From: Macrostomum lignano
Lineage: Eukaryota
Reading direction: 5' to 3'
Assembly: GCA_002269645.1 (NCBI GenBank)
Contig: NIVC01004033.1
Location: 1 to 63,640, forward strand
DNA: 63,640 nucleotides
Positions 3,234-4,229 of the stretch are shown one piece after another; positions within the stretch are counted from its first letter, which is position 1, and each line of letters starts with the position of its first letter. Under the pieces are notes generated by a model. That model had not been told where the DNA came from. It did not search any database and saw only the letters and a program-made list of their open reading frames with translations. Both the position numbers and the translations under genes were made by a program.

Positions 3234-4018
3234 TTTGATGCCGTTTTTGGCGCTTCTCAACTGTGATTTTCGCGCCAAGTAGCATCGCCAAAAATGCTAT
3301 CCCGTAGCAAATTTAAATTCTTGGATTCCAGTATAAATATTGACTTAATAAAACAAAAAATATCTTTGTGAAATTTTAGCGCATGATTCTTTAGAAAGGC
3401 GCTAATCTTATTAGTAGCATTTATATTCTACGTTTTAATTTTAATTCTAGTATTTAAAATTTAGACGTAACTTGGACTTTTCGTAAAGAATAGTATATAG
3501 TTAAGCACCAAAATTAACTTTCAGGATCACCTAAAATATCTTATACCTAAATAATATTAGTAGGTAGCCAACTGAAATATTAGCTAAATGCATTATTCGG
3601 GTATTTATGGTCGAAAGCAGCTCAATTAAGTTTTTCTAATATAAGGCTTGATTTAGAATTGCAGATTTATGTGCAAATTTTACTTCTACATGTATTTATT
3701 TAAATGAAAGAGACTTTTTGCGCAAGATGGTGCAGTCAGGTTTTCTGAAAGAATTTTGAATTTCAATAGGGAATCAGACACTATATGTTCACCCTTAGCT
3801 GCGCCAACGGTTGAGAGATCTAAAATTACATGTAAAGATATTTACATGCAGATCGGAAGTTGAGGTTGCGCATTTTTCTGAAAACATCCTCTTTATGGTG
3901 TACCATTTTGATCTTTGAGCGCATTATTAGTAGTATATAAACTGTACTTGCTAATAATGTATTGTATACTTTTAATATTTGAATTTGTGCAGTTTACTCG
4001 TACTTGGATTGTACAGTA

Positions 4019-4229
4019 GCATGCAATGGTGGGCTCAGCACGCCTGTGTAGTATGAGACAGACCAGGCTTACGAGCTAAGGTCTGCGATCCTACAAACTT
4101 GCACTCCCTCTATTCTGGTGCAGGAATGGCAGGAGAGCTCTCTCCAAGCTGACTCACAAGCCGACCCGGGGTTCACGTCCCGCATGTGTTCAAGGCAGCT
4201 CTAGGGCTGCTGGACTTATCGGGCCAGCT
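4019..4229 (+). ncRNA. HDV-like (CPEB3-type) ribozyme at the LINE 5' end
   Basis: P1 GCATGC 4019-24 / GCATGT 4182-87 (G.U at +1); P3 GGG 4169-71 / CCC 4179-81; L3 TTCACGT; P4 GCAGCT/GGCTGC; J4/2 CTTAT (C4215); P2 AGCCGACCCG 4159-68 / CGGGCCAGCT 4220-29 with two A.C mismatches. G4019 directly follows the TSD. Confidence 0.75.

What the first reader, a model, noticed from the sequence alone, without database searches (positions are those of the whole stretch)
4005..4229. CPEB3-like HDV ribozyme whose cut site coincides exactly with the LINE 5' boundary
Seen: the left TSD ends at 4018 and G4019 begins P1 (GCATGC/GCATGT, G.U at +1). L3 TTCACGT followed by G-U matches the CPEB3 ribozyme pattern with a single P1.1 pair. 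J1/2 is ~135 nt with three hairpins (agacc/ggtct, tgcac/gtgca, ggagag/ctctcc). The TSD and the fold were found independently and agree to the base. P2 has two A.C mismatches and J4/2 reads CTTAT instead of C-N-R-A, so this copy may be impaired.
Basis: partly seen in the sequence, partly recalled or inferred. Interest (0 to 1): 0.85.

Follow-up and report, generated by a model that had tools for sequence, protein, structure and literature searches.

The report
Ribozyme at a retrotransposon's 5' end
The first 211 bases of a dead, internally deleted LINE-type retrotransposon fold like a hepatitis-delta-virus-type self-cleaving ribozyme whose predicted cut falls on the element's first base; other LINE families are already known to do this, so it is a credible but ordinary new example.

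Summary
A GC-rich, 3.36-kb non-LTR retrotransposon (4019-7376; broken ORF1, AP-endonuclease, RT deleted, RNase H/CCHC, conserved 3' tail) lies between 13/14-nt target-site duplications. Its first 211 nt fit the HDV-like nested double pseudoknot:
- P1 is 6 bp with G.U at the cut site.
- J1/2 is a closed 134-nt domain.
- P2 is 10 bp with two A.C mismatches.
- P3 is GGG/CCC.
- L3 is UUCACGU, identical to the Cpeb3 ribozyme.
- P1.1 is one pair; P4 follows.
- J4/2 is CUUAU.

A loose descriptor matches often by chance. A descriptor limited to published hallmarks hits only this site in the window, and 0 of 60,000 shuffles place a cut at base 1.

Caveats:
- No Rfam model matches.
- No relative with a 5' UTR could be retrieved, so there is no covariation or consensus test.
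- A gapped alignment can extend the duplication 8 nt into P1.
- J4/2 departs from C-N-R-A, so this copy may be impaired.

Verdict: a genuine, possibly decayed, 5'-processing ribozyme and a new member of a known kind (R2, L1Tc, Baggins, RTE). Interest is modest.

The parts
4005..4018 (+). Left target-site duplication TGGATTGTACAGTA
   Evidence: Matches 7377-7389 with one T indel. The local alignment beats all 2000 shuffles.
4019..4024 (+). P1 5' strand GCAUGC. The predicted scissile bond is between A4018 and G4019.
   Evidence: Six pairs with 4182-4187, with G.U at +1. The duplex energy is -6.6 kcal/mol. P1 is recovered in the unconstrained MFE.
4025..4158 (+). J1/2: a 4-nt linker, a closed multi-branch peripheral domain (closing helix 4029-4039/4148-4157, three inner hairpins), then 1 nt
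   Evidence: MFE and centroid structures are identical at -48 kcal/mol, z = -1.78. The closing helix is -15.3 kcal/mol, but a closing helix of at least 5 bp also appears in 15% of shuffles.
4159..4168 (+). P2 5' strand AGCCGACCCG
   Evidence: Pairs with 4220-4229 at 8 of 10 positions, with two A.C mismatches. Energy is -8.9 kcal/mol.
4169..4181 (+). P3 (GGG/CCC) enclosing L3 UUCACGU (4172-4178)
   Evidence: Read directly from the sequence. TTCACGT occurs only twice in the window, and only here is it flanked by a 3-bp helix. The Cpeb3 ribozyme has the same heptamer.
4182..4187 (+). P1 3' strand GCAUGU
4188..4189 (+). G4188 (the single P1.1 pair, with C4174 of L3) and U4189
   Evidence: Read from the sequence. 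The pairing is inferred from the family's architecture.
4190..4214 (+). P4 hairpin: 6 bp at 4194-99/4206-11 plus two outer pairs
   Evidence: Energy is -9.0 kcal/mol.
4215..4219 (+). J4/2 CUUAU. C4215 is the candidate catalytic cytosine and A4218 the constrained A.
   Evidence: Read from the sequence. U4217 stands where the family usually has a purine.
4220..4229 (+). P2 3' strand CGGGCCAGCU
4230..4454 (+). Remainder of the 5' UTR, up to the first ORF1 ATG at 4455
4455..5771 (+). ORF1, broken (frame changes near 4593 and 4830, plus in-frame stops)
   Evidence: Three-frame translation. No homologues were found.
5768..6527 (+). ORF2 AP-endonuclease domain, broken by frameshifts, an 8-codon deletion and a stop
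   Evidence: 53-68% identical to P0002 (Pfam PF14529).
6528..6551 (+). Junction of an internal deletion that removed the reverse-transcriptase domain
   Evidence: Homology to P0002 ends at 6527, and L001 homology (RNase H end) starts at 6552. No RT motif appears in any frame.
6552..7224 (+). C-terminal part of ORF2: the end of RNase H and a CCHC motif
   Evidence: 59% identical to P0001 (Pfam PF00075).
7225..7376 (+). 3' UTR with conserved blocks and a terminal (TAAGTCAAG)x2 at 7359-7376
   Evidence: The blocks and the terminus are shared with L001, after which the flanks differ.
7377..7389 (+). Right target-site duplication TGGATGTACAGTA

Best explanation
Positions 4019-4229 are the HDV-like self-cleaving ribozyme, or its slightly decayed relic, that forms the 5' terminus of a non-LTR retrotransposon with AP endonuclease and RNase H.

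How it most likely worked in the active parent:
1. The element is transcribed as part of a longer read-through transcript (inferred).
2. Once about 211 nt of element RNA have emerged, P1, P3/L3, P4 and P2 form a nested double pseudoknot. The structured 134-nt J1/2 domain holds P1 and P2 together.
3. C4215 in J4/2, with a Mg2+ ion at the G4019.U4187 wobble, catalyses attack of the 2'-OH of the upstream nucleotide on the A4018/G4019 phosphate. This is the established chemistry of the family.
4. The element RNA is released with a 5'-OH on G4019.
5. That RNA is translated and copied by target-primed reverse transcription, so a full-length insertion starts at G4019 directly after the target-site duplication. 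That is what the window shows.

Shown here: the sequence, the pairings, their rarity by chance, the TSD and the 3' terminus. Inferred: catalysis, co-transcription, and whether this particular dead, RT-deleted copy can still cleave.
For: - All helices and junctions are in canonical order at the stated coordinates.
- The unconstrained MFE recovers P1 across 165 nt, plus P3, P4 and the closed J1/2 domain.
- Adding P1 or P2 to the J1/2 domain + P3 + P4 scaffold gains 6.3 or 8.2 kcal/mol. That makes the pseudoknot competitive with the nested MFE of -72.9 kcal/mol.
- The hallmark-restricted descriptor hits only this site in 127 kb of window sequence (both strands). Among 60,000 shuffled UTRs there were 18 cores, 3 full motifs and 0 cutting at base 1. 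Even the loose descriptor puts a cut at base 1 in only 5 of 6000 shuffles.
- L3 is identical to that of the Cpeb3 ribozyme.
- The TSD is significant, and the 3' end is confirmed by a relative.
- Literature: cleavage at the element's 5' end occurs in R4, Dong, Baggins and L1Tc. P1-P1' spacing ranges from 23 to more than 700 nt. P2 mismatches are common. C and G are conserved in L3, and J4/2 has a catalytic C and a constrained A. Structured J1/2 domains activate large HDV-like ribozymes.
Against: - No Rfam HDV-family model matches, even at E <= 10 on a small sub-window.
- Overall folding energy is unremarkable (z = +0.25).
- J4/2 is CUUAU rather than C-N-R-A, P2 has two A.C mismatches, and P1.1 is a single pair.
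- No second copy and no relative's 5' UTR was available, so there is no covariation or consensus test.
- The strict descriptor was fixed after the candidate had been seen, so its significance is overstated.
- A gapped alignment lets the TSD run into P1.
- One intact but distant relative (L006, about 29% identity in the endonuclease) has tandem repeats at its 5' end, not a ribozyme.
Confidence: 0.77

Rival explanations
1. The target-site duplication is really about 22-24 bp long (4005-4026/28 = 7377-7396/99, with extra indels and a mismatch). The element would then begin near 4027-4029, GCATGC would be target DNA, and its pairing with 4182-4187 would be fortuitous. The downstream core would be a relic without its P1, or nothing at all.
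For: The best local alignment is TGGATTGTACAGTAGCATGCAA against TGGA-TGTACAGTA-CATGTAA. Only 2.2% of flank 14-mers resemble 4019-4032 as well as 7390-7403 does. CATG-rich motifs are common in the flank. GCATGC is a palindrome, so P1 amounts to a repeated hexamer.
Against: - This reading needs about 3 indels and 1 substitution in 24 nt. The element's coding part shows roughly one indel per 400 nt (my estimate).
- It leaves unexplained why a core that is rare by chance (18 of 60,000 shuffles) finds a perfect 6-bp partner with G.U exactly at the ungapped TSD end.
- The similarity has another explanation. The cDNA end may have annealed to the target by microhomology, as proposed for R2 elements that cleave at their own 5' end (abstract).
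Confidence: 0.1
2. A chance match: a permissive structural motif found in a GC-rich 5' UTR by a reader who was looking for it near the boundary.
For: The loose descriptor matches 32 times in the window, and 18% of shuffled UTRs have a core. There is no Rfam hit, no significant overall stability and no covariation data.
Against: With a cut fixed at base 1 the loose descriptor succeeds in 5 of 6000 shuffles, and the hallmark descriptor in 0 of 60,000. L3 is identical to Cpeb3's. The location is the known biological position for this ribozyme class.
Confidence: 0.07
3. The 5' UTR structure is real and conserved but serves mainly another purpose, such as an internal promoter, an IRES-like translation element or a binding site for the element's protein. 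Under this reading there is no self-cleavage.
For: HDV-like folds in R2 are also reported to bind R2 protein and to promote translation of uncapped RNA. This copy departs from the catalytic consensus in J4/2.
Against: I could not recognise an initiator or downstream promoter element by eye at the expected spacing; this is weak evidence. The hallmark catalytic features are present: G.U at +1, C and G in L3, and a C three bases before an A in J4/2. They would have no reason to exist in a purely structural element.
Confidence: 0.05

Closest known systems
L1Tc ribozyme (L1TcRz) of Trypanosoma cruzi, ingi/L1Tc clade
   Same: An HDV-like ribozyme occupies the very 5' end of a dispersed, TSD-flanked LINE that encodes AP endonuclease, RT and RNase H. 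It releases the element RNA from longer transcripts.
   Different: L1TcRz is compact (77 nt) and overlaps an internal promoter. Here the ribozyme spans 211 nt with a 134-nt J1/2 domain, no promoter is evident, and the host is an animal genome.
R2 (and R4/Dong) retrotransposon ribozymes
   Same: The double-pseudoknot has a large, variable J1/2 (P1-P1' spacing 23 to more than 700 nt). P2 mismatches are tolerated. C and G are conserved in L3, and J4/2 has a catalytic C and an A. Dead elements carry dead ribozymes.
   Different: R2 is site-specific in 28S rDNA, uses a restriction-like endonuclease, and often forms P1 with 28S sequence upstream of the element. Here the element is dispersed, has an AP endonuclease, and P1 lies wholly inside it.
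Baggins (LOA clade) and mosquito RTE ribozymes such as drz-Agam-2-1
   Same: They are 5'-terminal HDV-like ribozymes of AP-endonuclease LINEs, cited as cleaving at the element's 5' end. In drz-Agam-2-1 a structured J1/2 (P1.2) domain pinches P1 and P2 and speeds cleavage nearly 1000-fold.
   Different: I could not compare sequences, because the primary paper (Ruminski et al. 2011) is not held and Rfam's models do not match. The clade of this element is unresolved because its RT is deleted.
Mammalian CPEB3 ribozyme
   Same: It has the identical L3 heptamer UUCACGU. From my own knowledge, it also has G-U after P1' giving a single P1.1 pair, and the same order of P4, a 5-nt J4/2 starting with C, and P2.
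   Different: CPEB3 is a single-copy intronic element of about 68 nt with a very short J1/2 and a J4/2 that fits C-N-R-A. It is not part of a transposon. The Rfam CPEB3 model does not match here.

Membership tests
HDV-like self-cleaving ribozymes | Nested double pseudoknot in the order P1 - J1/2 - P2 - P3 - L3 - P3' - P1' - P1.1 - P4 - J4/2 - P2' | tested here: met
   All strands are present in this order. Descriptor scans recover it. The energies are competitive with the nested MFE.
HDV-like self-cleaving ribozymes | P1 of 6-7 uninterrupted pairs starting at the cleavage site, with a G.U wobble as the first pair | tested here: met
   GCAUGC/GCAUGU, with G4019.U4187.
HDV-like self-cleaving ribozymes | 3-bp P3 closing an L3 with the conserved C and G (and U) | tested here: met
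   GGG/CCC enclosing UUCACGU. The conserved L3 C and G are described in the R2 paper, and the heptamer is identical to Cpeb3's.
HDV-like self-cleaving ribozymes | J4/2 with the catalytic C followed by N-R-A | tested here: inconclusive
   In CUUAU, C4215 and A4218 are present but U4217 replaces the purine. The R2 literature requires only the C and one constrained A.
HDV-like self-cleaving ribozymes | P1.1 between L3 and the bases after P1' (two pairs in the prototype, one in CPEB3) | tested here: inconclusive
   Only G4188-C4174 is available in the family register; U4189 faces U4173. This is a single pair, as in CPEB3 (from my knowledge).
HDV-like self-cleaving ribozymes | P2 of at least 5 pairs abutting P3 | tested here: met
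   8 of 10 pairs, with the four nearest P3 perfect, at -8.9 kcal/mol. [quoted passage not shown]
   No hit at gathering score or at E <= 10 on 601-nt and 86-nt sub-windows. The models do not represent the pseudoknot fully, nor a 134-nt J1/2.
HDV-like self-cleaving ribozymes | Compensatory base changes in the helices across related copies | not testable with these tools
   There is no second copy in the window. No relative with a 5' UTR turned up in any reachable collection.
HDV-like self-cleaving ribozymes | Site-specific self-cleavage giving a 2',3'-cyclic phosphate and a 5'-OH, abolished by mutating the catalytic C | not testable with these tools
   This needs an experiment.
Non-LTR (LINE) retrotransposon with AP endonuclease and RNase H | ORF2 with AP endonuclease, RT and RNase H; target-site duplication; a defined 3' terminus | tested here: met
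   The endonuclease and RNase H/CCHC parts are homologous to P0002 and P0001, which carry PF14529 and PF00075. A TSD is present, and the 3' terminus is shared with L001. The RT is missing from this copy because of an internal deletion, so the clade (I, LOA, R1, ingi-like) cannot be assigned.
CPEB3 ribozyme family (Rfam RF00622) | Conserved sequence of about 68 nt in an intron of the CPEB3 gene of mammals | tested here: not met
   It lies inside a transposon, between host genes of other types. The Rfam model does not match. Only L3 and the local layout resemble it.

The most novel reading that the evidence does not exclude
The exact Cpeb3-type active site (L3 UUCACGU, a single P1.1 pair, a 5-nt J4/2) at the 5' end of an AP-endonuclease LINE is not convergence but common descent. 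Under this reading the mammalian CPEB3 ribozyme was exapted from the 5' end of an ancient LINE of this lineage. A lesser reading is also open: the RT-less copy may be a non-autonomous, internally deleted derivative, comparable with the R2 'SIDE' elements. It would have been mobilised in trans because it kept the ribozyme and the 3' UTR.
Probability: 0.05. Interest if true: 0.6.

Novelty: new member of a known kind. Interest (0 to 1): 0.3.

Why it matters
If it is confirmed, this adds one more LINE lineage that fixes its RNA 5' end by self-cleavage instead of using an internal promoter. This lineage is an AP-endonuclease/RNase H type in an animal genome. The example would combine a Cpeb3-type active site with a large, closed J1/2 domain.

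It would help in three ways:
- Annotating true full-length 5' ends of this family.
- Studying how peripheral domains tune HDV-like ribozymes.
- Asking whether the same active-site sequences recur by descent or by convergence.

It does not change the current picture. 5'-terminal HDV-like ribozymes in non-LTR elements have been known since 2010-2011.

Tried and rejected
1. Rfam at gathering score on the whole window, and at E <= 10 on 3900-4500 and 4150-4235. No HDV-family hit; only weak, unrelated miRNA, snoRNA and lncRNA matches.
2. A second copy in the window. None found.
3. Protein searches with the RNase H/CCHC part, the endonuclease part and ORF1. They gave three short JGI contigs at about 60% identity (L001-L003), none reaching the 5' UTR, and nothing for ORF1.
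4. Scans for related loci. Viral contigs gave none. Metagenome contigs gave 7 loci at about 30% identity, with no HDV motif and no Rfam hit. The one intact distant relative, L006, has tandem repeats at its 5' end.
5. DNA pattern of the core with P1' left free. There were six matches in bacterial MAGs, which I take as chance matches for an 18-base pattern in 596 Gb (my estimate), and none in viral contigs.
6. A single-sequence covariance model of the core (R1) found only itself.
7. Exact look-up of a host ORF to identify the source. It is not on record, so the organism remains unknown.
8. Thermodynamic z-scores are not discriminating, and the closed J1/2 domain alone is not significant (15% of shuffles).
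9. The Ruminski et al. 2011 paper, which lists LINE ribozymes, is not held.

Considered and rejected as the main explanation: chance, and an extended TSD (see the rival explanations).

Full report
**What is there.** The window has a 3.36-kb block of 54-63% G+C between flanks of about 30% G+C.

Its right end is ...CAGCTAAGTCAAGTAAGTCAAG (7355-7376), followed by TGGATGTACAGTA (7377-7389). Its left end is preceded by TGGATTGTACAGTA (4005-4018). The local alignment of the two junction regions scores above all 2000 shuffles.

The 3' terminus is confirmed independently. A relative on metagenome contig L001 is 59-61% identical in protein. It shares conserved 3' UTR blocks and ends in the same ...CAGCTAAGTCAAGTAAGTCAA, after which its flank is unrelated.

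Inside the block:
- A broken ORF1 starting at 4455.
- An AP-endonuclease domain (5768-6527), 53-68% identical to P0002 (Pfam PF14529).
- A direct jump into the end of RNase H and a CCHC motif (6552-7224), 59% identical to P0001 (Pfam PF00075).

The reverse-transcriptase domain is deleted and the remaining frames carry frameshifts and stops. This is a dead, internally deleted non-LTR retrotransposon with both termini intact. There is no second copy in the window.

| Part | Coordinates | Detail |
|---|---|---|
| P1 | 4019-4024 / 4182-4187 | six pairs; G4019.U4187 at the predicted cleavage site |
| J1/2 | 4025-4158 | 134 nt |
| P2 | 4159-4168 / 4220-4229 | 8 of 10 pairs; two A.C mismatches |
| P3 | 4169-4171 / 4179-4181 | GGG/CCC |
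| L3 | 4172-4178 | UUCACGU |
| after P1' | 4188-4189 | G4188, U4189 |
| P4 | 4190-4214 | hairpin |
| J4/2 | 4215-4219 | CUUAU |

The insert is therefore a closed multi-branch domain, leaving only 4 nt and 1 nt between P1 and P2. That is the arrangement reported to activate large HDV-like ribozymes by pinching P1 and P2 together (PMC4908430).

An unconstrained MFE fold of 4019-4229 recovers P1 across 165 nt, together with P3, P4 and the J1/2 domain. Adding P1 or P2 to the scaffold of J1/2 domain + P3 + P4 gains 6.3 and 8.2 kcal/mol. The pseudoknotted fold is therefore competitive with the best nested fold of -72.9 kcal/mol.

**Is it more than chance?** Stability alone says nothing. The z-score is +0.25 for the whole region and -1.78 for J1/2, and a closing helix appears in 15% of shuffles.

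A deliberately loose descriptor, just wide enough to accept the candidate, is also common:
- It finds 32 core matches on the two strands of the window.
- 18% of dinucleotide shuffles of the 436-nt 5' UTR have a core, and 6.6% have a full motif.
- Only 5 of 6000 shuffles have a full motif whose cut is at base 1.

I then restricted the descriptor to hallmarks taken from the literature: L3 U-N-C-N-N-G-N, G.U at the cut, and a C three bases before an A in J4/2.
- The candidate is the only hit in the whole window on either strand.
- Of 60,000 shuffles, 18 have a core, 3 a full motif and none a cut at base 1.

The strict descriptor was fixed after I had seen the candidate, so these numbers overstate the significance. 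Even the loose test gives about 1 in 1000 for the coincidence with the boundary.

TTCACGT occurs twice in the window, and only here is it flanked by a 3-bp helix. The same heptamer is in the Cpeb3 ribozyme: a published mouse primer that starts 18 nt from the cleavage site reads GTTCACGTCGCGGCC (PMC10919898).

**The boundary caveat.** With gaps allowed, the best alignment of the two junctions runs on to 4026 (TGGATTGTACAGTAGCATGCAA against TGGA-TGTACAGTA-CATGTAA). Only 2.2% of flank 14-mers resemble the first element bases this well.

A reading in which the TSD is about 22-24 bp and GCATGC is target DNA therefore cannot be excluded. I give it about 0.1, for two reasons:
- It needs roughly three indels and a substitution in 24 nt. 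The element's coding part shows about one indel per 400 nt (my estimate).
- It leaves the rare downstream core finding a perfect partner at the ungapped TSD end as a pure coincidence.

The similarity has a natural alternative explanation. For R2 elements that cleave at their own 5' end, second-strand synthesis is proposed to be primed from chance microhomology between target and cDNA (PMC3774820, abstract). This is an inference.

**Negative and missing evidence.**
- No Rfam family matches, either at gathering score or at E <= 10 on small sub-windows. Those models do not encode the full pseudoknot and would penalise a 134-nt insertion, so this weakens the case but does not refute it.
Protein and DNA searches returned only short contigs lacking the 5' UTR, loci at about 30% identity without any HDV-like motif, or presumably chance matches in bacteria. 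The one intact distant relative has tandem repeats at its 5' end.
- The source organism is not in the look-up collection. Neighbouring genes (WSC domain, TCERG1-like WW/FF, TACC) indicate an animal genome.

**How it most likely works.** By analogy with the experimentally studied cases:
1. The active parent element is co-transcribed with upstream sequence.
2. The ribozyme folds once about 211 nt of element RNA exist.
3. C4215 and a metal ion at the G.U wobble catalyse cleavage between A4018 and G4019.
4. The released RNA, with a 5'-OH on G4019, is the template for translation and for target-primed reverse transcription. A full-length copy therefore begins at G4019 right after the TSD.

The sequence, pairings, statistics and termini are shown here. 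Catalysis and co-transcription are inferred.

This copy may be impaired: it has U instead of a purine at J4/2 +2 and two A.C mismatches in P2. Each mismatch could be turned into a standard pair by a single transition. The R2 literature also notes that dead elements tend to carry inactivated ribozymes.

- The closest in element type is L1Tc, which has AP endonuclease, RT and RNase H, is dispersed and carries TSDs.
- The closest in ribozyme architecture are R2 and drz-Agam-2-1, with their large structured J1/2.
- The closest in active-site sequence is CPEB3.

It meets the structural definition of the family apart from an atypical J4/2 and a single P1.1 pair. It fails the Rfam models, and it is untested for covariation and cleavage. 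I file it as a probable new member of a known kind, with confidence 0.77 and modest interest.

No hepatitis delta virus sequence was used as a yardstick; the comparison rests on the Cpeb3 primer and on published descriptions.

Noticed in passing
window 7225-7376 and L001 1560-1663: The 3' UTR has strongly conserved blocks (CAGGGGTTAGCGA[A/C]ATGGGCGGC, CCTC[C/T]TCGCTGT, CAGCTAAGTCAAGTAAGTCAA) shared with a relative that is only about 60% identical in protein. It ends in two copies of TAAGTCAAG rather than poly(A). This is probably the recognition site for the element's reverse transcriptase.
   Followed up: partly
window 6528-6551: The whole reverse-transcriptase domain is missing between the endonuclease and RNase H, while both termini, the ribozyme and the 3' UTR are kept. 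The deletion could have happened after insertion. Alternatively this could be a non-autonomous, internally deleted element mobilised in trans, like the R2 'SIDE' elements.
   Followed up: no
window 3914-3967: An AT-rich inverted repeat (GCGCATTATTAG ... CTAATAATGTATTGTAT) lies about 50 nt upstream of the insertion site. It gave a weak, sub-threshold mir-126 match (21 bits against a gathering score of 47; E = 0.19).
   Followed up: no
window 272-548 and 1254-2131: There are two G+C-rich minisatellites: a 22-bp unit x 12.7 copies, and a C-rich 19/79-bp unit x 45 copies with very strong GC skew. They create long spurious ORFs on both strands.
   Followed up: partly
window 8480-8722: An exon-like ORF about 1.1 kb downstream of the element, on the same strand, encodes a WSC domain (Pfam PF01822, E = 1.8e-14). 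The element may therefore sit in or next to a host gene that could supply read-through transcription.
   Followed up: partly
window 28941-31458 and 46972-47931: Host genes are present: a TCERG1-like protein with WW and FF domains and long glutamine/proline-rich stretches, and a TACC C-terminal domain. They indicate an animal genome with long exons. The species was not identified.
   Followed up: partly
window 4230-4241: Directly after P2' lies the 12-nt palindrome GGCCAGCTGGCC, which overlaps the end of P2'. It could form a small hairpin or compete with P2.
   Followed up: no
L006 1778-1945: An intact distant relative (ORF1 564 aa, ORF2 over 1250 aa) has about five tandem copies of a roughly 31-nt unit (GAGATGTTCCCCTTTTTGC...) at its 5' end instead of a ribozyme. 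Related LINEs may use different 5'-end strategies.
   Followed up: partly
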